This document shows, one piece after another, positions 11,710 through 57,715 of a stretch of 64,000 bases of DNA. Numbering within the stretch: the stretch's first letter is position 1; each line of letters begins with the position of its first letter. The DNA comes from Macrostomum lignano (lineage: Eukaryota). Below the pieces are notes generated by a model, which was not told the DNA's origin, did no database searches, and saw nothing but the letters and a program-made list of their open reading frames with translations. A program made the translations under genes and the position numbers. The stretch is taken from contig NIVC01000759.1 of NCBI GenBank assembly GCA_002269645.1, forward strand, positions 372,001 to 436,000, given 5' to 3'.

Positions 11710-12825
11710 TCAAGGTATCCGAAGACTGCAAGGTACTTCGTTACCATTCGGCTGTCGTTGCGAAAGGACCGCTCCTATTCCAACATCTGATGCGTCTGTT
11801 GTCAGGATCGTCGGCAAGTTTGGGTCAAAAATAGCCAGTTCAAGGCGTTCGTGGAGCAGCGACTTCACTCGTTCGAAGGCTTTTTGCTGCTTTTCTCCCC
11901 AGATAAACCTCTGGTGCTTTCTTGTCAACATTCGTAGGGGCTCTGTAACGTTAGCCAAGCCTGGCAGGAAGTTCGAATGGTAGTTGATCAATCCAAGGAA
12001 GGATCGAAGTTCTTCGGAATTCTTCGGTGCCGGTGTATTCTTGATAGCCTCTAGCTTCGCGGGGTCGGACTCGACGTTCCCAAGTTCGTTGATAATGTAG
12101 CCAAGGAAAGGCACTCGTTCTTTTCGGAGTATTGACTTGGCGGTGTTGATTCGGAAGTCTTTTTCGTGCAGCAACTTCAGAACCTTCCGTAGTTCTTCGT
12201 CGTGTTCCGCGATGGTCTTTCCGAAAACGAGAATATCGTCAATGTATGCAATCGTGTGATCACAACCAACTAGTGTGTTGCTAACGCATCGTTGAAATAC
12301 GGATGCGGAGTCCACCAAGCCCATTGGCAGTCTATTGTAGGCATAGAGTCCGATCGGGGTTGCAGTTGTGGTTAAATGCTTGCTTTCTTCGTCCAGCTCA
12401 ATGTGGAAGTAGGCGCGCTTTAAATCAATCTTAGACTTGTAGCGGGCGCCTCGGAGCTTCAGAAAGAGGTCGTTGATGTTTGGTACGGAGTACCGGTCAG
12501 GGACTACAAACTTGTTCAGGTGCGACAGGTCAGTTGTAATCCGTACGCTTCCGTCGGCTTTCCACACGGTAACCAAACCGTTGACCCACGAACTTTTCTC
12601 GATTGGGCTCCAGATTCCGCATTCCTCCATTTGCTTGATCTCTGTGATGGCAGCCTCTTGGCGGGCAAACGGAATTGTCCTAGTGGGGATGCACTTGGGA
12701 ATTGCATCAGAGCGAATTGTAATTTTATGTGTGTGGTCCGGGAAGGTTCCCAGTGACTCCTCGGACAACTTAGGAAATTGTTTTTTGACCTCGCTGAATT
12801 GGTCAGAAATGGCTGAAACCTGCAT
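11710..12825 (-). pseudogene. Gypsy reverse transcriptase with truncated RNase H
   Basis: KIDLKRAYFHIEL, YNRLPMGL, AYIDDILVF and LTTDASDVGIGAVLSQ; the RNase H C-terminal part is missing. Confidence 0.92.
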
Positions 12826-15547: not shown

Positions 15548-17455
15548 TTAAATGTTTCCTGGCTGAGACTTGAACTTATTGGGAGCCAGGAGGCTCTGTA
15601 AGTTACGTTGCCGTGTAAAAGCGGGCAGTATGCGGGAGCCAGGTTTATTTTGTAGCTTATCAAAGTTTTTAGCAATCTCGTTGGCAAGCCAGACCGTAGA
15701 TGGGTGAAAAGGAAGGACCATTGGGATGGGTCGGAGAAGATGATTGTCGACCCTGATGTTCGTACCTGGCGGTTTGTCAGTCCCCAGTTTTTTAATCCAG
15801 ATTTCTTCCCTTAGTTCGATTTTGTTGTTATTAAGAACTTGTTCGATAGCAATGGAGACAAAGTTTGCAATCGAGTGATTGGGGGTGAGAAAGTGCTCTG
15901 ACCCCGAAGTTACGACTCTCCTGTTAATATTTGACCTGTGCTGGTTCATTCTATCTCTCATTGTTCTTCTAGTCATCCCTACATAGAAGATTTTCCCAGG
16001 GTGGCACTGGTTGCAGGAGATGCCATAGATGATGTTCTTGGAGCCACAGGACAGGCTCTGAGAGATTAAAAAACCGGAAGCCGGTTTCAGTCCCTGGGCG
16101 GAGAGAGCAGGCGGTGAGTGGGTGCAGCATTTGCAGCGGGATGACCCACAGGGATGGAACCCTTTGGGAAGCAGACCCAGATTGGTCGTTGGTCCCGCAG
16201 TCCAGTTCATAAGTATGAGGACATCCTTTTTGCAGTTTCTAAGAAAAATCTTCGAGTGGCCTAATTGCTTGAGTTCCGATTTTAAAGAATTGAAAGCATC
16301 GTTGAAAGACTTGTAGTCATCACAGATACGAGCGTACCGAAGGATTTGGGATTTTACTACCCCCTTGAAGGTGTGTGACGGATGGAAGGACTGTCGGTGC
16401 AACAATCTATGAGTGTCTGTTTCTTTTGAAAACAGTTGTGTTGTGAAGCGGTTTTCAGCTTTCCTGATGGTCATGTCAAGGAAACTGACCTCAGTTGATG
16501 AGGAGCTGACGGTGAGTTTGATGTTGGGGTTGATTGAATTTAGGTGTACAACAAATTCTGTCAGAGTTTCAGCCGGGTGGTCCCAGTGAATGAAGATATC
16601 ATCTATGTACCTAAAATAGATGTTCGGCTTATAAAGAGCAGTTCTCAGGGCAGTTTCCTCCCAGAGGCTCATGAAGAGACAGGCATAGCTGGGCGCAAAT
16701 ATGCGCCCCATGGCTGTACCTCTAAGTTGTAGGAAAATCATTTTGTCAAATTCAAAGTCATTCCTGTACAAACACAATTCCAGTAGCTTTATTATTTCAG
16801 CATCCGGTCTAATGGGATCCGGGTATCGGTTAAAGAATTCCTGGATCGCTGCAATGCCCTGATCTATTGGGATCATGGAGTACAGACTCTGGACATCACA
16901 GGTTGCCAGAGTCGAACCTTCCGTGCAGCTTTTCTCCATAAGGTGTGCCTTTAAGTCATAGGAGTCCTTAATGAAAGTGGGTTGCGCTTGGGCAATCGGT
17001 TTTAGAAAGAAGTCTATGTACTTTTCTGCCCCAATTGCTTCAGAACTACATCCGCTCACAATAGGTCTGCCTGCTGGGACCCGAAAGGGGATCAGCCAGG
17101 TGGCCGGGTCCTTGTGAATTTTTGGGAGCAGGTAGAAATGCCGGGGACGGAAGTTCTCTCCGGGACAAAGAAATGCACACTGTTTCTTAGATATGAACTT
17201 TCTGTTACATAAATTGAGGAAGATCCCCCTAATAAGTTCCGCAGTCACGGGTTGCAATGGCTGGTCCAGCTGTTGATAGGCATCAGTGTCAAACAGTTGG
17301 TTGTAGGCTGCAAATTCGTAGTCCTTAGGGTGCATGATGACCACTGCGTTGCCTTTGTCCGCCTTTTTTATAAGGACGGAGCTGTTTCGCTTGAGCCTCT
17401 GAATCGCCCTGGTCTCTGGTGCCTCTAGGTTGCCTTTGATCTGTCCCGTTGTCAA
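15548..17455 (-). CDS. Penelope-like RT + GIY-YIG endonuclease (635 aa open; 1-bp frameshift upstream at about 17453)
   Basis: IKKADKGNAVV, YLLPKIHK, GRPIVSG, DVQSLYSMIP, QLRGTAMG, FRYIDDIF, CGSSRCKCC linker, NIIYGISC..FYVGMT..RMNQHR, AFTRQRNLQSLL. Confidence 0.93.
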   Translation of the reverse strand: MTTGQIKGNLEAPETRAIQRLKRNSSVLIKKADKGNAVVIMHPKDYEFAAYNQLFDTDAYQQLDQPLQPVTAELIRGIFLNLCNRKFISKKQCAFLCPGENFRPRHFYLLPKIHKDPATWLIPFRVPAGRPIVSGCSSEAIGAEKYIDFFLKPIAQAQPTFIKDSYDLKAHLMEKSCTEGSTLATCDVQSLYSMIPIDQGIAAIQEFFNRYPDPIRPDAEIIKLLELCLYRNDFEFDKMIFLQLRGTAMGRIFAPSYACLFMSLWEETALRTALYKPNIYFRYIDDIFIHWDHPAETLTEFVVHLNSINPNIKLTVSSSSTEVSFLDMTIRKAENRFTTQLFSKETDTHRLLHRQSFHPSHTFKGVVKSQILRYARICDDYKSFNDAFNSLKSELKQLGHSKIFLRNCKKDVLILMNWTAGPTTNLGLLPKGFHPCGSSRCKCCTHSPPALSAQGLKPASGFLISQSLSCGSKNIIYGISCNQCHPGKIFYVGMTRRTMRDRMNQHRSNINRRVVTSGSEHFLTPNHSIANFVSIAIEQVLNNNKIELREEIWIKKLGTDKPPGTNIRVDNHLLRPIPMVLPFHPSTVWLANEIAKNFDKLQNKPGSRILPAFTRQRNLQSLLAPNKFKSQPGNI

Positions 17456-17899: not shown

Positions 17900-23542
<5,643 letters not shown>

Positions 23543-24257
23543 GCGTCTCGCACTGCTTCCATGCTTGAGTTGAGCTGCAATCGAGTCGCATAGGCAGCCA
23601 CTGCGACTTAGCCCTGGCCTGTTTAGATGCCTTTTTATCATTGTTGCCTCTGCTGCAGCCAGCGAGAGAAGATGCTCAGCCCTTCACCCCGCACCGAATC
23701 TCTGAGCACAGCCGCACCCTGTGCTCTCAAGCCGCAATTTTCTCTCTGCGCCTCCCTCCCTAGACTCGAACCCGTTTTCATTTCGGCGGTCTCTGGGTGG
23801 CGCTGGCAGCATCCATGTTTCTAAGAAAACAGCTCTCCGTTTTTGTTGGTAGCGACGGCAGAATCTGCTCTAATTTGTGTATTTGGAGTTGGTCTTGCGT
23901 TGAGAATGAGACTTGTAATTGGAATTGGAAATGTACCTTAGGCACACTGAGCAGATGAAAAACTTGAATAGATGCGGTAGCAACACTGCATAATATTTAC
24001 CATCAGCTAAAAATCGAAAGGTAGATTAAAAAATCAAAAGTCAAGTGAACATAGGGGTCAAAGTTATGGTAGTCACTAGGGGTCACTGGGGGTCAGTCAT
24101 CAGGAAGCAGGCAGAGTCAAGTGAGCATCAAGTAGTCACTGGGGGTCAGTTATGAGAAAGCATCAAGTAGTCAACATCAAACGACAAGAACTTAACAAGT
24201 GACTAATAAGCATCAAATATAACATGACAGACTTCACTCTGATTCTGCAACATGTTT

Positions 24258-27200
24258 TCAACGAGAACCCAAGCTGAACAGCTGCAGACTCCGTGAGCGC
24301 TTCTGAGCTTTGCTCGGATCAAAGGAGACCTGCCGAGCGAGCTGTGACACGGTCTGAGCAACGCAATAGTACTTTATAATTTCGCCTCTCTCATTTCTGA
24401 ACTCGTACGGCTTCTCCGCCATGTGCCGCCTCACGAGAATCATGATGTCCTCCAGGTGCTTCTCCGTGTAAAATTGCTCGATGTAGTCGCACAGGGTCTG
24501 CACGAAGACGCTGCCAGTCTGAGGGTCGCGGTAGGACACCTGACCCTCTGTGGTAGGGAAGCAGAACAGGAAGTCACTCTCTGGAGGGTACAGGGCCGGG
24601 TTCTGCGCGAACTCTGGGGGCAGCTGGTCGACTGCCAGCCCCCTGTGCGTCACTTCGTCTGTGCCACTGCCACGGCAGGCCTGGACAAAGAAGAGCTTCG
24701 GCTTGCCCGCCAGGTCGGGGCAGACGGAGGCCTGGAGGAGGGTTGGGAAATGTGTAGAAATTTGTAGAGCTGCAATGCTTTGTATCATATGCACAGATGA
24801 GCCAGACCCAGACCCACCTTGAACTTGGCTGCGAGCTCCAGAACCGGACTCTGCACTCCATGGCCATCGATAATGCAGTCCCTTCCCTGTGGGTCCTTGC
24901 GGCCGTGGGCCATCAGGAAGCAGACAAAACTGCCGTGCTTGGCGAGCTCCTTGGACTTCTTTGTCTCATTGAGGAAGTCATCGATCTCTGCAGTTGTGGT
25001 ATTTTGCTTCTCCATGATGGTGAAACTCAGCTTCCTGAAAAGCTTCCTCACTCGCTCCACATCCCGCTCCGAGCCTTTGCGCTCCTCTTCGCCGCTGCCG
25101 GCTGAGTACGCGTTGATGTTGATGATGAGGCAGAACCCCTGCGGGTTCGTCACCTGGTAGAAATCCTCATGGAGTCTGGAATGCAGCAGGGTGATCGGGG
25201 CGTGAAGCAATGAGTGCAGAACAGGAATCTCCAGAGACCTTTGCCTAATTATGGGTGCAGTTTTGCCCAAGAATGCCGTGGAATGCTGTGGGCACACTGT
25301 ATTATATATAATCTCTTCCTTACTAAACCTAAACTGATCATTGTTATATCTCTGAAGAAAAAAGAACTAAAAACCAATCGAAGCAAATCATATTCTATGA
25401 GCGTTGCATGCAGCCCACAATAAAGCTTTGACTTCATTTAAAAATCTTTTTTTCTTCAAAATTTAATGCTATTAATTAGCTCGTAAATCCAGCATTCAAT
25501 TTTTAATGTCACTGTAACAGACGTGCCAATATATCCGCTTTTTTCATACAAAACTTACGGAACTGTCGGCGTCTTCTCAGACTGGGACCTCTGCTGGTGC
25601 CGCCGCTCAGCGATCCACCGCGTCAACTGAGACCCGTGCCGAGAGTTCAGCTTTGCGTAGTCAGCAACAGACTTTCGCTTCCATGGAAGAAAGTGCGAGG
25701 CATCCCTTAGATCAAGGACAGAGACACCCAGTAAGTCAACGATGAAGCTGAGCGTTTCGACATCTTGATATTGAGCAGCCAGATGAGCCGCTGTAATCCC
25801 GTTAAAACCTCTTTTCAAAAGGCATGACCGGCCGAGTTGCTGAACGAGCCACTTGAGACAGGAGTTAGTAGCTTCATTCGTAGCGGCATGGTGAATGGCA
25901 GTGCGTTGGCAATTGCCAGGCTGATGGAAGCAGTCGGATCCGAGGACTGATTTGAAGAACTGCATGGAATCGGCGCCCTGAAACTCAGCAGCGAGATGGA
26001 TGGGAGTGCTTCCTTGTTGGTCTCGAACGGAGAGACAGTCGGTTCCGCACTCGTTCACCAGCCACTTGAGACAGGAGTTAGTAGCTTCATTAAAAGCGGC
26101 GCCGTGAATGGCAGTGCGTTGTAAGTAGCCAGGCTGATGGAAGCAGTCGGATCCGAGGACTGATTTGAAGAACTGCATGGAATCGGCGCCCTGAAACTCA
26201 GCAGCGAGATGGACGGGAGTGTCTCCTTGTTGGTCTCGAACGGAGAGACAGTCGGTTCCGCACTCGTTCACCAGCCACTTGAGACAAGAGTTAGTAGCTT
26301 CATTCCTAGCGGCTTTGTGAATGGCAGTGCGTTGTAAGAAGCCAGGCTGATGGAAGCAGTCGGATCCGAGGACTGATTTGAAGAACTGCATGGAATCGGC
26401 GCCCTGCTTCCAAGCAGCGAGATGGACGGGAGTGTCTCCTTGTTGGTCTCGAACGGAGAGACAGTCGGTTCCGCACTCGTTCACCAGCCACTTGAGACAG
26501 GAGTTAGTAGCTTCATTAAAAGCGGCGCCGTGAATGGCAGTGCGTTGTAAGTAGCCAGGCTGATGGAAGCAGTCGGATCCGAGGACTGATTTGAAGAACT
26601 GCATGGAATCGGCGCCCTGAAACTCAGCAGCGAGATGGACGGGAGTGTCTCCTTGTTGGTCTCGAACGGAGAGACAGTCGGTTCCGCACTCGTTCACCAG
26701 CCACTTGAGACAAGAGTTAGTAGCTTCATTCCTAGCGGCTTTGTGAATGGCAGTGCGTTGTAAGAAGCCAGGCTGATGGAAGCAGTCGGATCCGAGGACT
26801 GATTTGAAGAACTGCATGGAATCGGCGCCCTGCTTCCAAGCAGCGAGATGGACGGGAGTGCTTCCTTGTTGGTCTCGAACGGAGAGACAGTCGGTTCCGC
26901 ACTCGTTCACCAGCCACTTGAGACAAGAGTTAGTAGCTTCATTCCTAGCGGCTTTTTGAATGGCAGTTTGTTGTAAGTAGCCAGGCTGATGGAAGCAGTC
27001 GGATCCGAGGACTGATTTGAAGAACTGCATGGAATCGGCGCCCTGAAACAAAGCAGCGAGATGGACGGGAGTGTTTCCTAGTTGGTCTCGAACGGAGAGA
27101 CAGTCGGTTCCGCACTCGTTCACCAGCCACTTGAGACAGGAGTTAGTAGCTTCATTCGTAGCGGCCTGGTGAATGGCAGTGCGTTGTAAGAAGCCAGGCT

Positions 27201-27948
27201 GATGGAAGCAGTCGGATCCGAGGACTGATTTGAAGAACTGCATGGAATCGGCGCCCTGCTTCCAAGCAGCGAGATGGACGGGAGTGCTTCCTTGTTGGTC
27301 TCGAACGGAGAGACAGTCGGTTTCGAACTCGTTCACCAGCCACTTGAGACAGGAGTTAGTAGCTTCATTTAAAGCGGCCTGGTGAATGGCAGTGCGTTGT
27401 AAGAAGCCAGGCTGATGGAAGCAGTCGGATCCGAGGACTGATTTGAAGAACTGCATGGAATCGGCGCCCTGCTTCCAAGCAGCGAGATGGACGGGAGTGT
27501 CTCCTTGTTGGTCTCGAACGGAGAGACAGTCGGTTCCGCACTCGTTCACCAGCCACTTGAGACAAGAGTTAGTAGCTTCATTCCTAGCGGCTTGGTGAAT
27601 GGCAGTGCGTTGTAGGTAGCCAGGCTGATGGAAGCAGTCGGATCCGAGGTTTCGGTTAATGAGCTCCATCCATGACTCATCCAGATACAAGGCAGCCAGG
27701 TGCACTGGAGTGTTCATCTTCTCGTTGGTGCAGGTGAGGCATTTGGTTCCAAGTTTCTTAATGAGAGCCTCCATGCAGCTTAGACTGTCGGGAAGGCAGG
27801 CCACGTGGTGAGCAATGGACTGCTCCAACTGGTTGACGCTGACGGTATGGTTGGTGTCGAGCTGCCGGCAGAGCTCGAGGAGGCTGTCCAAGTCATTGGC
27901 AGCGAGTGCTGCAGCTACCAATGCGCGCATTGAGGCTTTCGGCTCCAT
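24258..27948 (-). CDS. Ankyrin-repeat-caspase fusion protein (3 exons: 27948-25559, 25175-24818, 24731-24258; about 1,073 aa)
   Basis: GT-AG introns 25558-25176 (CC|gtaagt...ttccag|A, phase 2) and 24817-24732 (phase 0) join the ankyrin ORF in frame to a caspase with RKGSERD, FLMAHG (His), KPKLFFVQACRG (Cys) and SYRDPQTGSVFVQ. Confidence 0.85.
25903..27606 (-). repeat. Eight near-identical coding 213-bp units (71 aa, two ankyrin repeats each)
   Basis: Unit: TAIHxAAxNEATNSCLKWLVNECGTDCLSVRDQxGxTPVHLAAxxQGADSMQFFKSVLGSDCFHQPGxLQR. Confidence 0.95.
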
Positions 27949-28321
27949 GTGAGACAGGGCTGGGTGAGTCAGTGGCGAAGGAGAGAGTGGGTGAGTCCAC
28001 AATTAACGTGTTGGCATTTAATACTTTAGTGCCCCAAAGCAAAACACGAGTACGCGATGTATTATAGGATAAAAGAAGAAAGAAAGAACTGCGCGAAAAC
28101 ACTGCCTGCTCAGCAGCGCGGCTGGAATAAAATAACCCCCCGGCCGGCGGAGGGGTGGGCGCCCACCTAAACAACACAGAACGTACACACGCGGCGGGGG
28201 GCCGCACAGACGCAGCGCGCTTGGGCACTAAAGCCGGTTTGCTCAAGGCAAGCCTAGCGCAAACCGCAGCCGCGGCGGAAAGGTGGATGCAGAGGAAGGT
28301 TGGCGACCGTAGCAACCATTT

Positions 28322-29271
<950 letters not shown>

Positions 29272-31106
29272 TTTCATGTACCCGAAGAATGGCCTACTCC
29301 TGGAGTGCCTCCTGGGAGACCCATTGTCTCGGACTGCAGCTCGGAAAGCTACATGTGCGCCAAATTTATCGATCTCTTCCTACAGCCGATCGCTAAGGAA
29401 CAAGACTCCTTCATCCGAGACACGGACCACTTTCAAGCGGCTATCAATGATTTGATTTTTGAAAAAGACAAAAATGTCTTTCTGGTTACAATGGATTTTG
29501 AATCCCTGTACACCAATATTCCCACTGATAAGGGATGGACGCCATTAGAGATGCCTTTCAAAAATTTCCCCAAACCTCAAGGCCAGATAACCATCTTCTT
29601 GCGCTCCTGGACATAAAATTGAACAAAAATGATTTTGTTTTCAACGACACGCGGTACCTTCAAGTCAAAGGCACAAGCATGGGAAAGGCCTTTGCGCCAT
29701 CCTACGCCAACATATTTATGTCTGCCTGGGAATCCAAAGCTTTAGAAGCTGCTCCGTTTACCCCTCGTTTCTTCAAGCGCTACATTGACGACATTTTTAT
29801 GGTCTTCGTCGGCACTGAAGACGAACTAAAGGAGATGCACAGGCATCTGAGTGAGTTCGATTGCAACATCCGACTCACGATGCAGTACAGCAGAGAGAAG
29901 GTTCACTTCCTGGACTGCTGTGTCAGTCTGACTGACGAAGGCAACAACAAGAGACTTTCGTGTTCAATCTACTTCAAACCCACCGATTCACGCCAGCTTT
30001 CAAATCCGGGGTCATTTCACCCAAAGCACACTTTCAAAGGTATACTGAAATCTCAGTTCCTCCGTTACGCTCGCCGTTGCACATTTAAAGAAGACTTCGA
30101 TGAGGCCAGCAGCAGCTTAACAAGCATCCTGAAGAAACAAGGATATTCTGTCCGCTTAATCAGGGATGCTAAAAAATCTGCCCTCATCCAGCTGGGCTTC
30201 TACATTGATGGTCGGTGGGAGTTCGGCTTCCAGGATTGTGGCAATCTGCCGTCCTTGCAGAGAGCACGGGCATTTTGGTCAAGTTTGTTTAGGGTCCAGC
30301 GCAACAAATATGATTTACAAAATTTGTCAAAAAGTCCGCTGTGACTCTAGTAATGTGGTGTATGCCATTCTGTGCAAGACTTGCAATGACCGCTGTATCT
30401 ACGTAGGTGAGACTGCAGGCGCTCTTAAAGTCAGACTTCAGGCTCACCTGAGCGACATCAGACTGGCTAAGGACACCCCAATCTCCAGGCACTTTCGGTC
30501 ACCAAACGACTGTATTTAGGACCTCCGCTTTATGGGTCTGTGGTACCTCAGTACTGAGTGCCTGGCCACTAAAGAGGGCGCTCAACGCAGGCGGAGGAAT
30601 ATGGAGCAGAAGCTCATCGCTTTACTACAGACCCAGACTCCAGCAGGCTTAAACACCGTCATCACTGAAAAAGACGCCTGCATCCCAATAGTGATCCCCA
30701 CGGACCACTCTGGGCGAATTGTTCATCAAATTGGCACGGCCATTTCGAACCACGCTGCAGAGCTGGATACGGTGGCTGCCTATACTCGCTCACGCTCATT
30801 AAAGGACATTCTATGTCCATCCAATCTGCCCGCCGTAACTAATGGTCAGGCCCGAAACTCAAACCTCTTTTCAGATGAGCACTAGATGTACAGATGTACA
30901 CACGCGTTGCAACGTGCCCGCCCAACCATATTGATCATTTTATTTTACTCGCGTCTTTCTATACTCACTATAAATACTCAACTCTGTTTTTTATTTACAA
31001 TATACCCTGACAAAGACCCTGTTTAGGTCGAAAGTTCGGTTTTTTCTCAAAATTTAATTAAAGAAATTGACTTTGCTTTAACTGTGTGCGAGGTTTTATT
31101 TCGCAT
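29272..31106 (+). mobile_element. Penelope-like element C, 5'-truncated and frameshifted
   Basis: HVPEEWPTPGVPPGRPIVSD, DFESLYTNIP, QVKGTSMG, RYIDDIF, NVVYAILC..YVGET and AAYTRSRSLKDIL across ORFs 28300..29616, 29535..30344, 30166..30519 and 30532..30885; followed by TATCTATCT at 31107-31115. Confidence 0.9.
31004..31040 (+). ncRNA. Degenerate hammerhead ribozyme motif (Penelope C)
   Basis: ACC-CUGACAA-A-GACC(CUGUUUA)GGUC-GAAA-GUUC-GGU; the core has G8>A relative to CUGANGA. Confidence 0.55.
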
Positions 31107-32548: not shown

Positions 32549-35117
32549 TCAGGGTTTCCGCATGAACTCGTGGCTGAGCAGCTCCTCGGTGTCCGCACGC
32601 CGGCTCGGCTCCTTCTCAATACAGCGCTGGTAGAAGTCGCGCAGGCTGTCGGAGGTCTTCGCCGGCAGCTGCGGCATGTCGTGCTGGCGGACCCGGTGCC
32701 CGATCATGTGCCAGGGGAACTCGCCATTGGGAAACTTCCCCGTCAGCAGCTCATAGACGGTGCAGCCGAACGCCCAGACGTCAGTCTTTGGCGAGTACAT
32801 CAGCTTGCCCGTATCCGTGAACAGCTCGCAAGCCATGAAGAAGACGGTGCCGCACAGGTGAGGTGTGCTGTCGGTAATTGTGTTTGTAATCTCCTTGACG
32901 AGGCCGAAGTCGATCAGCTTGATTCTGCCCTTGTGCGTCAGCATGATGTTCGAGCCTTTGATATCCCTGTGCAGGATGGTCGGCTTCCGGGTGTGCAGGA
33001 AGTTGAGCGCAGTGCAGATCTGTGCAGGTGTTACATATAGGTTTCAGGTGTTATATATAGGTTTCAGGTGTTATATACAGGTTTCAGGTGTTATATACAG
33101 GTTTCAGGTGTTAAGTATAGGTTACAGGTGTTAGATATAGTTTGCAGAGTGTTGGATATAGGTTTCAGAGTGTTAGATATAGGTTTCAGGTGTTAGATAC
33201 AGGTTTCAGAGTGTTAGATACAGGTTTCCGAGTGTTAGATATTGGTTGCAGGTGTTAGATATAGGTTTCAGGTGTTAGATATAGGTTTCAGGTGTTAGAT
33301 ATAGGTTTCAGGTGTTAGATATAGGTTTCAGGTGTTAAGTATAGGTTACAGGTGTTAGACATAGTTTGCAGAGTGTTGGATATCGGTTTCAGGTGTCAGA
33401 TAAAGGTTTCAGAGTGTTAGATATCGGTTGCAGGTGTTAGATACATGTATAGGTTGCAGGTGTTAGACAGATATTAGATATATGTAGCAGGTGTTAGATA
33501 TACATGTACATTAGGTTTCAGGTGTTAGATATAGGTTTCAGGTGTTAGATATAGGTTTCAGGTGTTAGATATAGGTTTCAGGTGTTAGATATAGGTTTCA
33601 GGTGTTAGATATAGGCTGCAGGTGTTAGATATAGGTTTCAGGTGTTAGATATAGGTTTCAGGTGTTAGATATAGGTTTCAGGTGTTAGATATAGGCTGCA
33701 GGTGTTAGATATAGGTTTCAGGTGTTAGATATAGGCTGCAGGTGTTAGGTCTGGGATCTTACCTGTTGGGAGAAGTCCCTCACTGCTTTCTCAGCGAAGG
33801 GCTTCTGCTGCTGCTGCATCAGTCCGGAGAGGCTGTTGCCGGAAATGAGCTCCGTGAAGATGCACAGCTTGCCTTGCTTGGTGCGCTCATACTTGAGGAA
33901 CTTCAGAATGTTCGGGTGCTCGAGCTTCCTCAGCACGGCGATCTCGGCGCACTCCTTCTCGACAGCCTTGTTTAACTTTTTGGAGGTCATAGCGCCTGCC
34001 AGCTTGATAATCTTGACAGCCACAGTCTGGTTCTTGTCAGTCAGCGCCTTGTACACCTTGCCGAAGCCGCCCGATCCGATCTGCTGCTTGCATCCGTCAT
34101 CGTCGCGAACAAATTGCCAGCTGGAGAAGTTCGAGTCCAGGGTCAGCCGAGTTAAAAGGCTGTAAAAAATTGTCAATCGCCTGTTTTGAGAACACTGACT
34201 ATGAAAAAAAATCGATTGAATTTGCAAAATATGGTCTTGATAAAAATTGTTATTAAAAATGAGTTTCACTGTACGTACCAGTTCTCCACTGACTGCCGCT
34301 TGTTCTGCGACTCCTGTGGCTGTTCGTTCTGCTCCTGCTCCTGGGTCTTCTGCTCCTGCTCCTGGGTCTTCTGCTCCTGCTCCTGGGTCTTCTGCTCCTG
34401 CTCCTGGATCTCCTGCTCCTGGATCTTCTGCTCCTGGTCCTTCTCTTCCCCATTAGGCCGCCCTCCCAGCTCGGCGACAAACTTCAGCAGCCGAGATCCG
34501 TGCTGAACGTTCTGCTCCATGTAGTCGGCCACCGAATTCCCGTCAGCGTCGAGAAGGTCGAACGCGGAAACGCCCAGCGAGTCCACGACGAGGCGAAACG
34601 AGTCCAGGTCTTGGTTCTGAGCAGCCAGGTGAGCAGGCGTAGCTCCATCCGAGTCTCTGTCCAGCAGGCAGGCTGGGCCGAGCTTTTCGACAAGAAACCT
34701 CAACGAGCTGCTGCTGGCTTCGTTCATGGCGGCCCAGTGAGCGGCGGTGCGCTTGAGCTGGCCGGGCTGCTTGAAGCAGTCGGGTCCGAGGGTTCGGTGA
34801 ATGAGCTCCAGCCATGACTCATCCTGGTGCATGGCGGCCAGGTGCACCGGAGTGTTTTGGTATTCGTTAACGCAGGTGAGGCAGTCGGGTCCGAACTTCT
34901 CAATGAGAGCCTCCAGACAGCAGAGTCCGCCAGGCAGCTGAGCGACGTGGTGAGCCACCGTCTGCTTGCGATTGCGCACGGTGAGCTGCAGCATCGAGTC
35001 CATGTTGCAGCAGAGGGGGAGCAGCCGGTCCGGCTCCCTGACATGGAGAGCGATGGAGACCGACAGAGCCTCCATGAGCTCTGTTTTCTTCTTTTGCATG
35101 CCGGTAGAAGCAAGCAT
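32549..35117 (-). CDS. Ankyrin-repeat Ser/Thr protein kinase (STE/MAP3K-like domain; 3 exons: 35117-34279, 34159-33763, 33019-32549; about 568 aa)
   Basis: GT-AG introns 34278-34160 (phase 2) and 33762-33020 (phase 0) keep the frame. Motifs: [39 protein letters not shown]. The N-terminal ankyrin module is homologous to that of the caspase gene. An alternative in-frame acceptor lies at about 34120. Confidence 0.85.
33025..33748. repeat. 20-bp minisatellite GGTGTTAGATATAGGTTTCA filling kinase intron 2
   Basis: Directly visible; runs to within a few bases of both splice sites. Confidence 0.95.

Positions 35118-36858: not shown

Positions 36859-57715
<20,857 letters not shown>

What the first reader, a model, noticed from the sequence alone, without database searches (positions are those of the whole stretch)
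24258..27948. Spliced ankyrin-repeat-caspase fusion: an apparent direct sensor-protease with no CARD/DED prodomain
Seen: the 815-aa ankyrin ORF ends exactly at a GTAAGT donor (25558). Its phase 2 matches the acceptor at 25176, and two more exons give a caspase with intact His (AHG) and Cys (QACRG) dyad and Asp-pocket residues (R in RKGSERD, Q, R in SYR). Established: initiator caspases normally carry death-fold prodomains and are activated by induced proximity. Inference: about 19 ankyrin repeats replace the prodomain, so ligand binding could directly oligomerise and activate the protease, like a one-component inflammasome. I do not know a characterised metazoan caspase with this architecture.
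Basis: partly seen in the sequence, partly recalled or inferred. Interest (0 to 1): 0.85.

Follow-up and report, generated by a model that had tools for sequence, protein, structure and literature searches.

The report
Ankyrin-repeat caspase gene in a flatworm
This is a real three-exon gene of the free-living flatworm Macrostomum lignano in which about 21 ankyrin repeats replace the usual death-fold prodomain of an intact caspase. Such "ANK caspases" were already described by sequence analysis in parasitic flatworms, but this hypervariable, expanded, free-living version was not.

Summary
On the minus strand, ATG 27948 opens a 2,390-nt ankyrin exon. It ends in phase 2 at a GTAAGT donor (25558) that overlaps the stop codon. 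Acceptor 25176 and two more exons give an in-frame 1,073-aa protein with Ank (1.7e-63) and Peptidase_C14 (4.6e-43). The Arg/His/Gln-Ala-Cys-Arg-Gly/Arg active-site set is complete, and an LAVD|Q site aligns with the caspase-7 intersubunit cleavage site.

The organism is Macrostomum lignano. RNA-seq-derived gene models of 94-97% identical paralogs read straight across the junction. Both caspase-domain introns are conserved in a paralog whose protein models are 35-48% identical.

The architecture is not new. "ANK caspases" of parasitic flatworms were published (Lee 2014, as cited by Genome Biol Evol 2024) but never tested functionally. That paper states that free-living flatworms lack them; this gene contradicts that.

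New here:
- Eight near-identical 71-aa double-ANK units vary mainly at canonical ANK binding positions (pN/pS 1.7).
- Repeat number appears to differ between near-identical copies.
- An Ank-kinase gene sharing the same Ank module and the same phase-2 intron lies directly upstream.
- The caspase belongs to a Macrostomum-specific clade with swapped N-terminal modules.

A sensor-protease reading is plausible but untested.

The parts
25559..27948 (-). Exon 1. Holds the start codon (27948-27946), an N-terminal capping region, about 21 ankyrin repeats and a ~55-aa helical linker. It ends in phase 2 (…ACA GTT CC|).
   Evidence: The transcript-based model P0002 starts at the homologous Met.
25847..27649 (-). 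Tandem array inside exon 1: 213-bp period (71 aa, two ANK repeats), 8.5 copies, 94% matches. Variation is concentrated at ANK binding-surface positions.
   Evidence: TRF. Unit alignment, pN/pS 1.69 and 7 of 12 variable columns on canonical positions, p=3e-4. With paralog units added, 8 of the 12 most variable columns are canonical, p=2e-5.
25176..25558 (-). Intron 1 (383 nt, GTAAGT…TTCCAG, phase 2, 37% GC). If it is retained, the TAA inside the donor (25557-25555) ends an Ank-only protein.
   Evidence: The splice-site sequences are the same in both paralog copies in L001.
24818..25175 (-). Exon 2: N-terminal part of the caspase large subunit, with S1-pocket Arg829 (25081-25079) and catalytic His887 (24907-24905).
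24732..24817 (-). Intron 2 (86 nt, GTGGGT…CTCCAG, phase 0). Its position is conserved in paralog locus L002.
24258..24731 (-). Exon 3. Holds QACRG with catalytic Cys935 (24677-24675), an intersubunit linker with SGTD and LAVD|Q (24638-24627), the small subunit with Arg984 (24530-24528), and stop TGA at 24260-24258.
   Evidence: AlphaFold gives pLDDT above 90 for the core and below 55 for the linker.
32549..35117 (-). Upstream neighbour on the same strand: an Ank-kinase gene with exons 35117-34279, 34159-33763 and 33019-32549. Its N-terminal region and Ank module are related to those of the caspase gene (49-56% identity). It has the same phase-2 intron after the Ank/linker exon and a STE20/MAP3K5-like kinase domain.

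Best explanation
What it is: a single, expressed, three-exon gene of Macrostomum lignano. It encodes a 1,073-aa cytosolic caspase zymogen. A long ankyrin-repeat solenoid plus a short helical linker takes the place of a CARD or DED prodomain.

Shown:
- The gene structure.
- Both domains.
- A complete Asp-specific catalytic apparatus.
- A predicted disordered intersubunit linker with an Asp site (LAVD|Q) that aligns with the caspase-7 IQAD|S site.

Inferred mechanism:
- The ANK array is the recognition module. Its concave binding surface is being diversified while unequal recombination keeps the scaffold homogeneous.
- Binding of a protein partner or ligand to the array brings two or more zymogens together, or relieves an inhibitory contact.
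- The protease then dimerises and autoprocesses at LAVD, and possibly at HED|F at the prodomain boundary.
- The active enzyme cleaves after Asp to trigger cell death or signalling.

Context: the gene is one member of a Macrostomum-specific caspase radiation. In that radiation the same protease core is combined with different N-terminal modules (Ank, Ank+kinase, Ras/Roc, LRAT). This particular Ank module is also used with a STE-type kinase and occurs alone.
For: Gene structure:
- The spliced reading frame is in frame.
- Exon and intron GC content differ.
- P0001 and P0002 read across the junction.
- The BOX15 models in GenBank derive from RNA-seq and transcriptome assembly, with experimentally set gene boundaries (PMC5730564).
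- Donor and acceptor sequences are the same in both L001 copies.
- In a paralog whose protein models are 35-48% identical, the phase-2 intron four codons before (D/E)FY and the phase-0 intron after KF(K/Q) are conserved.
- The caspase frame has no ATG before the S1-pocket Arg, so the caspase cannot be made alone from this locus.

Protease:
- Pfam Peptidase_C14 4.6e-43.
- Caspase-7 and caspase-3 match at 1e-31, with R/H/QACRG/R aligned and LAVD aligned on IQAD.
- The AlphaFold core has pLDDT above 90. Foldseek gives TM 0.89-0.91 to caspase-3 and -7, with caspases-9, -8 and -6 close behind.

Recognition role of the array:
- Eight units are 90-94% identical.
- They show 12 nonsynonymous variable columns against 2 purely synonymous ones, many through multi-nucleotide codon changes.
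- pN/pS is 1.69.
- Variable columns are enriched on canonical binding positions 2, 3, 5, 13, 14 and 33 (p=3e-4, and 2e-5 with paralog units).
- Protein length differs among 89-97% identical copies: 1,073, 862 and 694 aa, and P0002 has only 3 units against 8 here. The comparison rests partly on imperfect gene models.
- The same signature is documented for fungal NLR ANK repeats (PMC4986451).

Modularity.
Against: - There is no direct evidence of ligand binding, oligomerisation or protease activity.
- The protease domain is not distinctly initiator-like.
- Units within one array are not independent samples, because units 5-6 and 7-8 are a recent duplication. The pN/pS and enrichment statistics are therefore indicative only.
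- Between the window and its closest paralogs, caspase-domain dN/dS is 0.5-0.8 on fewer than 20 substitutions. That is only weak evidence of constraint.
- Sister copies carry premature stops, and one paralog has QAGRG. Part of the family is therefore decaying or non-catalytic.
- Transcript support comes from near-identical paralogs, not from reads mapped to this exact copy.
Confidence: 0.5

Rival explanations
1. Housekeeping apoptotic initiator. The ANK prodomain is a docking site for one conserved endogenous adaptor. It would replace the lost FADD/DED route in flatworms, as proposed for neodermatan ANK caspases, and would not be a variable sensor.
For: - PMC11463336 reports that platyhelminths lack FADD.
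- The N-terminus of the protease domain (DFYQVTNPQGFCLII) resembles the caspase-8 type by my recollection. Taenia's ANK caspase is auto-named Caspase-8.
Against: - A fixed adaptor interface does not predict near-identical repeats that vary at binding positions, or different repeat numbers between copies.
- It does not predict at least six Ank-caspase subfamilies whose Ank regions are barely alignable with one another.
- It does not predict re-use of the same Ank module with a kinase.
Confidence: 0.22
2. Targeting module rather than activator. The ANK solenoid anchors the caspase at a cellular structure or recruits particular substrates. Activation would come from an upstream caspase cleaving at LAVD, so the enzyme would behave as an effector.
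For: - The best sequence and structure matches are effector caspases-3 and -7.
- The linker Asp site is conserved (LAVD here, ETID in P0007).
Against: - Scores for caspases-8 and -9 are nearly as good.
- Long prodomains are typical of apical caspases.
- The variable binding surface argues for changing partners rather than a fixed anchor.
Confidence: 0.13
3. The fusion is not the main product. Intron 1 is mostly retained, giving an Ank-only protein that ends at TAA 25555. The caspase exons would then be used from another start or belong to a decaying gene.
For: - The stop codon lies inside the donor.
- Model P0003 begins inside intron 1, which suggests that some intron-containing transcripts were assembled.
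- Ank-only relatives exist.
- Sister copies have premature stops.
Against: - Two independent annotation sets read across the junction.
- The caspase frame has no ATG upstream of the essential Arg.
- The architecture and the intron phase are conserved in a paralog whose protein models are 35-48% identical.
- This copy has an intact 1,073-codon frame and all catalytic residues.
Confidence: 0.07

Closest known systems
ANK caspases of parasitic flatworms (Neodermata), as defined in PMC11463336 and first noted in Schistosoma by Lee et al. 2014. Examples seen here: Taenia solium P0146, Cichlidogyrus P0185 and Sparganum P0128.
   Same: - An N-terminal ankyrin-repeat region in place of CARD or DED.
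- A C-terminal canonical caspase domain.
- Found in Platyhelminthes.
- No functional data.
   Different: - The neodermatan proteins have only a few ANK repeats (Pfam hits span about 60-180 or 75-295) and a ~230-250-aa low-complexity linker. The window protein has about 21 repeats and a ~55-aa linker.
- The window array is internally near-identical and varies at binding positions.
- In my neighbour-joining tree the window protein sits in an all-Macrostomum clade. It shows no specific affinity to the neodermatan group.
- The host is free-living, whereas the published family is stated to be parasite-specific.
Fungal NLR (STAND) proteins with highly internally conserved ANK, TPR or WD repeats (PMC4986451)
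   Same: - Near-identical tandem repeats.
- Repeat-number variation.
- Variation focused on the concave binding surface.
- Combinatorial pairing of repeat modules with different effector domains.
- Expanded, birth-and-death gene families.
   Different: - There is no NACHT or NB-ARC oligomerisation module here.
- The repeats are N-terminal, and the effector (caspase or kinase) is fused directly.
- This is an animal, not a fungus.
Death-fold initiator caspases (caspase-8, -9, -2) and effector caspases-3 and -7
   Same: - Caspase fold.
- His/Cys dyad in AHG and QACRG.
- Arg/Gln/Arg S1 pocket for Asp.
- A cleavable intersubunit linker.
- A long prodomain, as in initiators.
   Different: - The prodomain is an ANK solenoid, not a CARD or DED.
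- No known adaptor or platform.
- Sequence and fold do not discriminate initiator from effector type.
Macrostomum Ank-Pkinase-caspase proteins (P0071 cluster). [quoted passage not shown]
   Same: - Same species.
- Same caspase clade in my tree.
- N-terminal ANK repeats.
   Different: - P0071 has a kinase domain between the Ank region and the caspase.
- Its caspase domain lies in a single exon after a 3-kb intron.
- In the window, the kinase and the caspase are two separate neighbouring genes, each with its own Ank exon.

Membership tests
Caspase (MEROPS C14A / Pfam Peptidase_C14) | Significant match to the caspase domain profile and to solved caspases | tested here: met
   PF00656 at 4.6e-43, 148 bits against a cut-off of 21.4. 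Caspase-7 and caspase-3 chains match at 1e-31.
Caspase (MEROPS C14A / Pfam Peptidase_C14) | Catalytic His-Cys dyad and Asp-binding Arg/Gln/Arg | tested here: met
   H887 (AHG), C935 and Q933 (QACRG), R829 and R984 align with the caspase-7 residues.
Caspase (MEROPS C14A / Pfam Peptidase_C14) | Caspase alpha/beta fold with a flexible intersubunit linker | tested here: met
   AlphaFold model of the 97%-identical P0001: core pLDDT above 90, linker below 55. Foldseek TM 0.89-0.91 to caspase-3 and -7.
Caspase (MEROPS C14A / Pfam Peptidase_C14) | Asp-directed proteolytic activity | not testable with these tools
   Needs an enzyme assay.
Platyhelminth ANK caspases (PMC11463336) | Ankyrin repeats as the pro-domain, N-terminal to p20/p10, in one polypeptide | tested here: met
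   Transcript-based paralog models span the junction.
Platyhelminth ANK caspases (PMC11463336) | Membership of the monophyletic ANK-caspase clade | tested here: inconclusive
   - In a neighbour-joining tree of 193 caspase domains, the neodermatan ANK caspases group together (bootstrap 100) but apart from the window protein.
- The common ancestor of the two spans 172 of 193 sequences.
- The published Bayesian tree places a Macrostomum kinase-caspase as sister to the ANK caspases. That protein is probably P0071, which lies in the window protein's clade in my tree.
- No maximum-likelihood or Bayesian tool was available.
Platyhelminth ANK caspases (PMC11463336) | Restricted to parasitic flatworms (as stated by the authors) | tested here: not met
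   The organism is the free-living Macrostomum lignano. This is a distribution statement by the authors rather than a structural criterion.
Initiator (apical) caspases | Death-fold (CARD or DED) prodomain | tested here: not met
   No CARD, DED, PYD or DD hit in Pfam.
Initiator (apical) caspases | Monomeric zymogen activated by induced dimerisation | not testable with these tools
   Needs biochemistry.
NLR/STAND-type innate sensors | Central NACHT or NB-ARC NTPase | tested here: not met
   Absent. Only ~55 aa lie between the last ANK repeat and the caspase domain.
NLR/STAND-type innate sensors | Repeat domain with high internal conservation, repeat-number variation and variable binding-surface sites | tested here: met
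   Compared with PMC4986451.

The most novel reading that the evidence does not exclude
Macrostomum carries a germline-encoded, rapidly diversifying receptor-like family. In it, a concerted-evolving ANK array that varies at its binding surface is fused directly, through a phase-2 exon junction, to interchangeable effectors: a caspase, a STE-type kinase, both, or none. This would be an NLR-like non-self or danger recognition system with no NOD module, so that binding of a pathogen- or damage-derived protein would directly switch on a death protease.
Probability: 0.22. Interest if true: 0.8.

Novelty: new variant of a known kind. Interest (0 to 1): 0.55.

Why it matters
- It shows that ankyrin-prodomain caspases are not confined to parasitic flatworms. 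That weakens the published idea that they arose with parasitism. Either the architecture dates to early rhabditophoran flatworms or it arose more than once.
- The internally near-identical array that varies at its binding surface, and the re-use of the same Ank exon with a kinase, give a concrete and testable candidate for a caspase activated without a death-fold adaptor.
- The host is a transgenic- and RNAi-tractable model animal.
- If the sensor reading is right, this would be an unusually simple recognition-to-execution device in animals.

Tried and rejected
I therefore could not see whether this exact copy has a published gene model.
- The supplements of PMC11463336 are not held. I could not obtain the authors' sequence list or identify their Macrostomum kinase-caspase by accession.
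- Lee et al. 2014 has no PMC id and was not read.
- A full-text search for six BOX15 gene identifiers found nothing.
- I first suspected that the published 'kinase-prodomain caspase' was a merged model of neighbouring Ank-kinase and Ank-caspase genes like those in this window. P0071 has no second Ank array between the kinase and the caspase, and it is supported by three GenBank and three UniProt models. It therefore looks like a genuine Ank-kinase-caspase transcript or a different locus. P0119, by contrast, does look like a merged model.
- The top non-flatworm hits in the exhaustive search (mites, insects, amphioxus) are proteins with several caspase domains, which inflates their scores. They are not close relatives.
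- A stand-alone caspase from the downstream exons was rejected because there is no ATG before the essential Arg.
- BLASTP of the Ank regions between Macrostomum subfamilies and against neodermatan ANK caspases gave only generic ANK similarity. Prodomain homology could not be used to test common origin.
Full report
**1. Observation**

The feature lies on the minus strand. The long ORF 25555..28002 is 815 aa when counted from an upstream TTG. Its first ATG is at 27948.

- From that ATG to 25559 is 2,390 nt, which is phase 2.
- The next bases are GTAAGT (25558 onward). The TAA that closes the ORF is part of this donor.
- The acceptor …CATTCCAG ends at 25176.
- Joining CC|A gives Pro, followed by LHEDFYQVTNPQGFCLIININ….
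- Exon 2 (25175..24818) ends AAG|GTGGGT, in phase 0.
- Exon 3 (24731..24258) follows …CTCCAG| and ends in TGA.
- The spliced CDS is 3,222 nt, in frame, and encodes 1,073 aa.
- Exons are 54-59% GC and intron 1 is 37%.

Pfam gives Ank_2 at 1.7e-63 for exon 1 and Peptidase_C14 at 4.6e-43 for exons 2-3. No death-fold domain is found. The repeat count is nearer 21 than 19.

**2. Is the splice real?**

The organism is the free-living flatworm Macrostomum lignano.

- Two independent protein models of 94-97% identical paralogs, P0001 (UniProt) and P0002 (GenBank BOX15_Mlig020959g1), read …SQSEKTPTVPLHEDFYQVTNPQG… across exactly this junction.
- P0002 starts at the homologous Met.
- The BOX15 annotation was derived from RNA-seq and a de novo transcriptome (StringTie/TACO). 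Gene boundaries were set from trans-splice and poly(A) reads (PMC5730564).
- In locus L001 of that assembly there are two tandem copies. Both have the same donor and acceptor sequences as the window.
- In the paralog locus L002 (protein models P0007, P0008 and P0015, 35-48% identical), a phase-2 intron sits at the same place, four codons before (D/E)FY. A phase-0 intron sits after KF(K/Q).
- The caspase frame has no ATG before the essential S1 Arg. The downstream exons therefore cannot encode a complete protease alone.

Model P0003 begins inside intron 1. Some intron-containing RNA was therefore assembled. Because the stop codon lies inside the donor, intron retention would give an Ank-only protein. 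That is a possible minor isoform.

**3. The protease**

- The best solved relatives are caspase-7 and caspase-3 (E about 1e-31). R829, H887, Q933, C935 and R984 align to the catalytic and Asp-pocket residues.
- LAVD|Q (residues 948-951) aligns on the caspase-7 IQAD|S intersubunit cleavage site.
- An AlphaFold model of P0001 (97% identical) has pLDDT above 90 throughout the core and below 55 in the intersubunit linker.
- Foldseek returns caspase-3 and -7 (TM 0.89-0.91), then caspases-9, -8 and -6 with nearly equal scores.

It is a canonical, apparently active, Asp-specific caspase zymogen. Sequence and fold do not say whether it behaves as an initiator or an effector.

**4. The ankyrin array**

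Exon 1 contains a 213-bp tandem repeat: 8.5 copies with 94% matches. Each 71-aa unit is two ANK repeats.

- Among the eight near-identical units there are 12 variable amino-acid columns. Only 2 columns vary purely synonymously.
- Several changes are two- or three-nucleotide codon replacements, for example AGG/TTA/ACG/TTT, TGG/GAG and AAG/TTT.
- Pairwise pN/pS is 1.69.
- Seven of the 12 variable columns fall on the 12 canonical ANK target-binding positions (2, 3, 5, 13, 14 and 33 of each repeat). The hypergeometric p is 3e-4.
- When units from paralog models are added, 8 of the 12 most variable columns are canonical (p = 2e-5).
- Copies that are 89-97% identical elsewhere differ in protein length: 1,073 aa here, 862 aa for P0045 and 694 aa for L001 copy A. 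P0002 has only 3 units. This suggests repeat-number variation, although some of these models are imperfect.

Three features stand out: high internal conservation, repeat-number variation, and variation confined to the concave surface. This combination is documented for the ANK, TPR and WD repeats of fungal NLRs. There it is attributed to concerted evolution plus diversifying selection on a recognition surface. It is reported to be rare in metazoan repeat proteins (PMC4986451).

Caveat: units within an array are not independent. Units 5-6 and 7-8 are a recent duplication. The statistics are therefore indicative only.

**5. Family and neighbourhood**

An exhaustive HMMER search of 1.84 billion representatives found 4,913 caspase relatives. 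Only M. lignano proteins are close.

Among the best 150 hits, Ank plus caspase occurs in two groups:
- Several Macrostomum clusters (P0045, P0047, P0049, P0087, plus P0007, P0008, P0010 and P0015).
- Neodermatan proteins (Taenia solium P0146, Cichlidogyrus P0185, Sparganum P0128).

A neighbour-joining tree of 193 caspase domains puts the window protein in a 33-member clade.
- All named members of that clade are M. lignano proteins.
- Their N-termini are Ank, Ank+Pkinase (P0071), Ras/Roc (P0053), LRAT (P0076, P0120) or short.

Directly upstream on the same strand, at 35117..32549, lies an Ank-kinase gene.
- Its N-terminal region and Ank/linker module are 49-56% identical to those of the caspase gene.
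- Its Ank exon also ends in phase 2 (AACTG|GTACGT).
- Its kinase is most like STE20/MST3/SLK and MAP3K5.

Ank-only relatives of the same module also exist. The Ank exon therefore behaves as a module that phase-compatible splicing joins to different effector exons.

Some paralogs are damaged.
- L001 copy B has TGA after KFKASV.
- L002 has TAA after KFQPK.
- P0010 has QAGRG in place of QACRG.

These may be decoys or pseudogenes. Together they suggest birth-and-death evolution of the family.

**6. Comparison with what is known**

[quoted passage not shown] According to that paper:
- They form a monophyletic group, sister to DED caspases.
- They were first noted in Schistosoma (Lee et al. 2014).
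- Free-living flatworms lack them.

A phrase search found no other paper on the topic, and none mentions these gene identifiers.

The architecture is therefore not new, but no member has been characterised functionally. The Macrostomum genes contradict the stated parasite restriction. The reported kinase-caspase is probably P0071, which also carries N-terminal ANK repeats.

The window protein differs from the neodermatan proteins in three ways:
- It has about 21 repeats rather than a few.
- Its linker is ~55 aa rather than ~230-250 aa.
- Its array is near-identical internally and varies at binding positions.

My tree does not join the two groups. Neighbour-joining on such divergent domains cannot exclude the sister relationship seen in the published Bayesian tree. 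Common origin and convergence both remain open.

**7. Mechanism**

The most likely account is as follows.
- The ANK solenoid is the recognition and recruitment prodomain.
- Partner binding clusters or unlocks the zymogen.
- The protease dimerises and autoprocesses at LAVD|Q, and possibly at HED|F.
- It then cleaves after Asp.

The gene structure, the domains, the catalytic residues and the pattern of variation are shown. Binding, clustering and activity are inferred.

The rivals are:
- A conserved adaptor-docking initiator.
- A targeting domain on an effector-type caspase.
- Predominance of an Ank-only isoform.

**8. Verdict**

- This is an undescribed, markedly different variant in a free-living, experimentally tractable flatworm.
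- It has receptor-like evolutionary signatures and a neighbouring kinase gene that shares the same Ank module.
- Interest is moderate to high (0.55).

Noticed in passing
window 32549-35117 (-): Three-exon Ank-kinase gene directly upstream of the Ank-caspase gene. It shares the N-terminal/Ank module (49-56% identity) and the same phase-2 intron after the Ank exon. It has a QEQEQKT repeat linker and a STE20/MST3/MAP3K5-like kinase domain with HRD and DFG intact.
   Followed up: yes
L001:11721-12637 (NIVC01000874.1) and L002:11091-11190 (NIVC01002066.1): Two different Ank-caspase paralogs each carry a premature stop within a few codons after intron 2, before QACRG: KFKASV-TGA and KFQPK-TAA. This leaves Ank plus half a large subunit. 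They could be pseudogenes, sequencing errors or catalytically dead decoys.
   Followed up: partly
protein P0010 (M. lignano paralog): An Ank-caspase paralog with QAGRG instead of QACRG. The catalytic Cys is replaced by Gly, so it may be a pseudo-protease.
   Followed up: no
proteins P0053/P0197, P0076/P0120, P0071 cluster: Within the same Macrostomum-only caspase clade, other members carry Ras/Roc, LRAT (NlpC/P60-type) or Ank+Pkinase N-terminal parts. This is a lineage-specific burst of domain shuffling onto one caspase core. P0071's caspase domain is a single exon after a 3-kb intron (L003).
   Followed up: partly
window 20270-23640: A ~3.3-kb purine-rich (GA-type) satellite immediately 3' of the caspase gene. 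It gives spurious ORFs of more than 1,000 aa in several frames (RERERE…, SLSLSL…).
   Followed up: no
window 28300-29300 and 33030-33750: A (CTAT)n microsatellite of about 1 kb just 5' of the caspase gene. A ~20-bp minisatellite (tatatctaacacctgaaacc) fills intron 2 of the Ank-kinase gene.
   Followed up: no
window 29535-30344 (+), 11710-12825 (-), 15548-17455 (-): Retroelement fragments. There is a weak RVT_1 match between the two Ank genes, an LTR-type RT plus RNase H, and an ORF with RT plus GIY-YIG (Penelope-like).
   Followed up: partly
window ~37000-57269 (-): Laminin-like gene upstream, with Laminin_N at 56346-57269 and laminin EGF repeats at 40978-42420. The surrounding region is 58-60% GC and contains a PPPNPP/GGLGGGADW-type repeat at 35.3-36.3 kb.
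   Followed up: no
proteins P0119, P0196, P0206, P0009: Several UniProt models of this family look like merged neighbours (P0119 has kinase + partial caspase + Ank + caspase; P0196 has Ank regions and two caspase stretches). P0009 looks like a frameshifted translation. Published domain architectures for this species need checking against the genome.
   Followed up: partly
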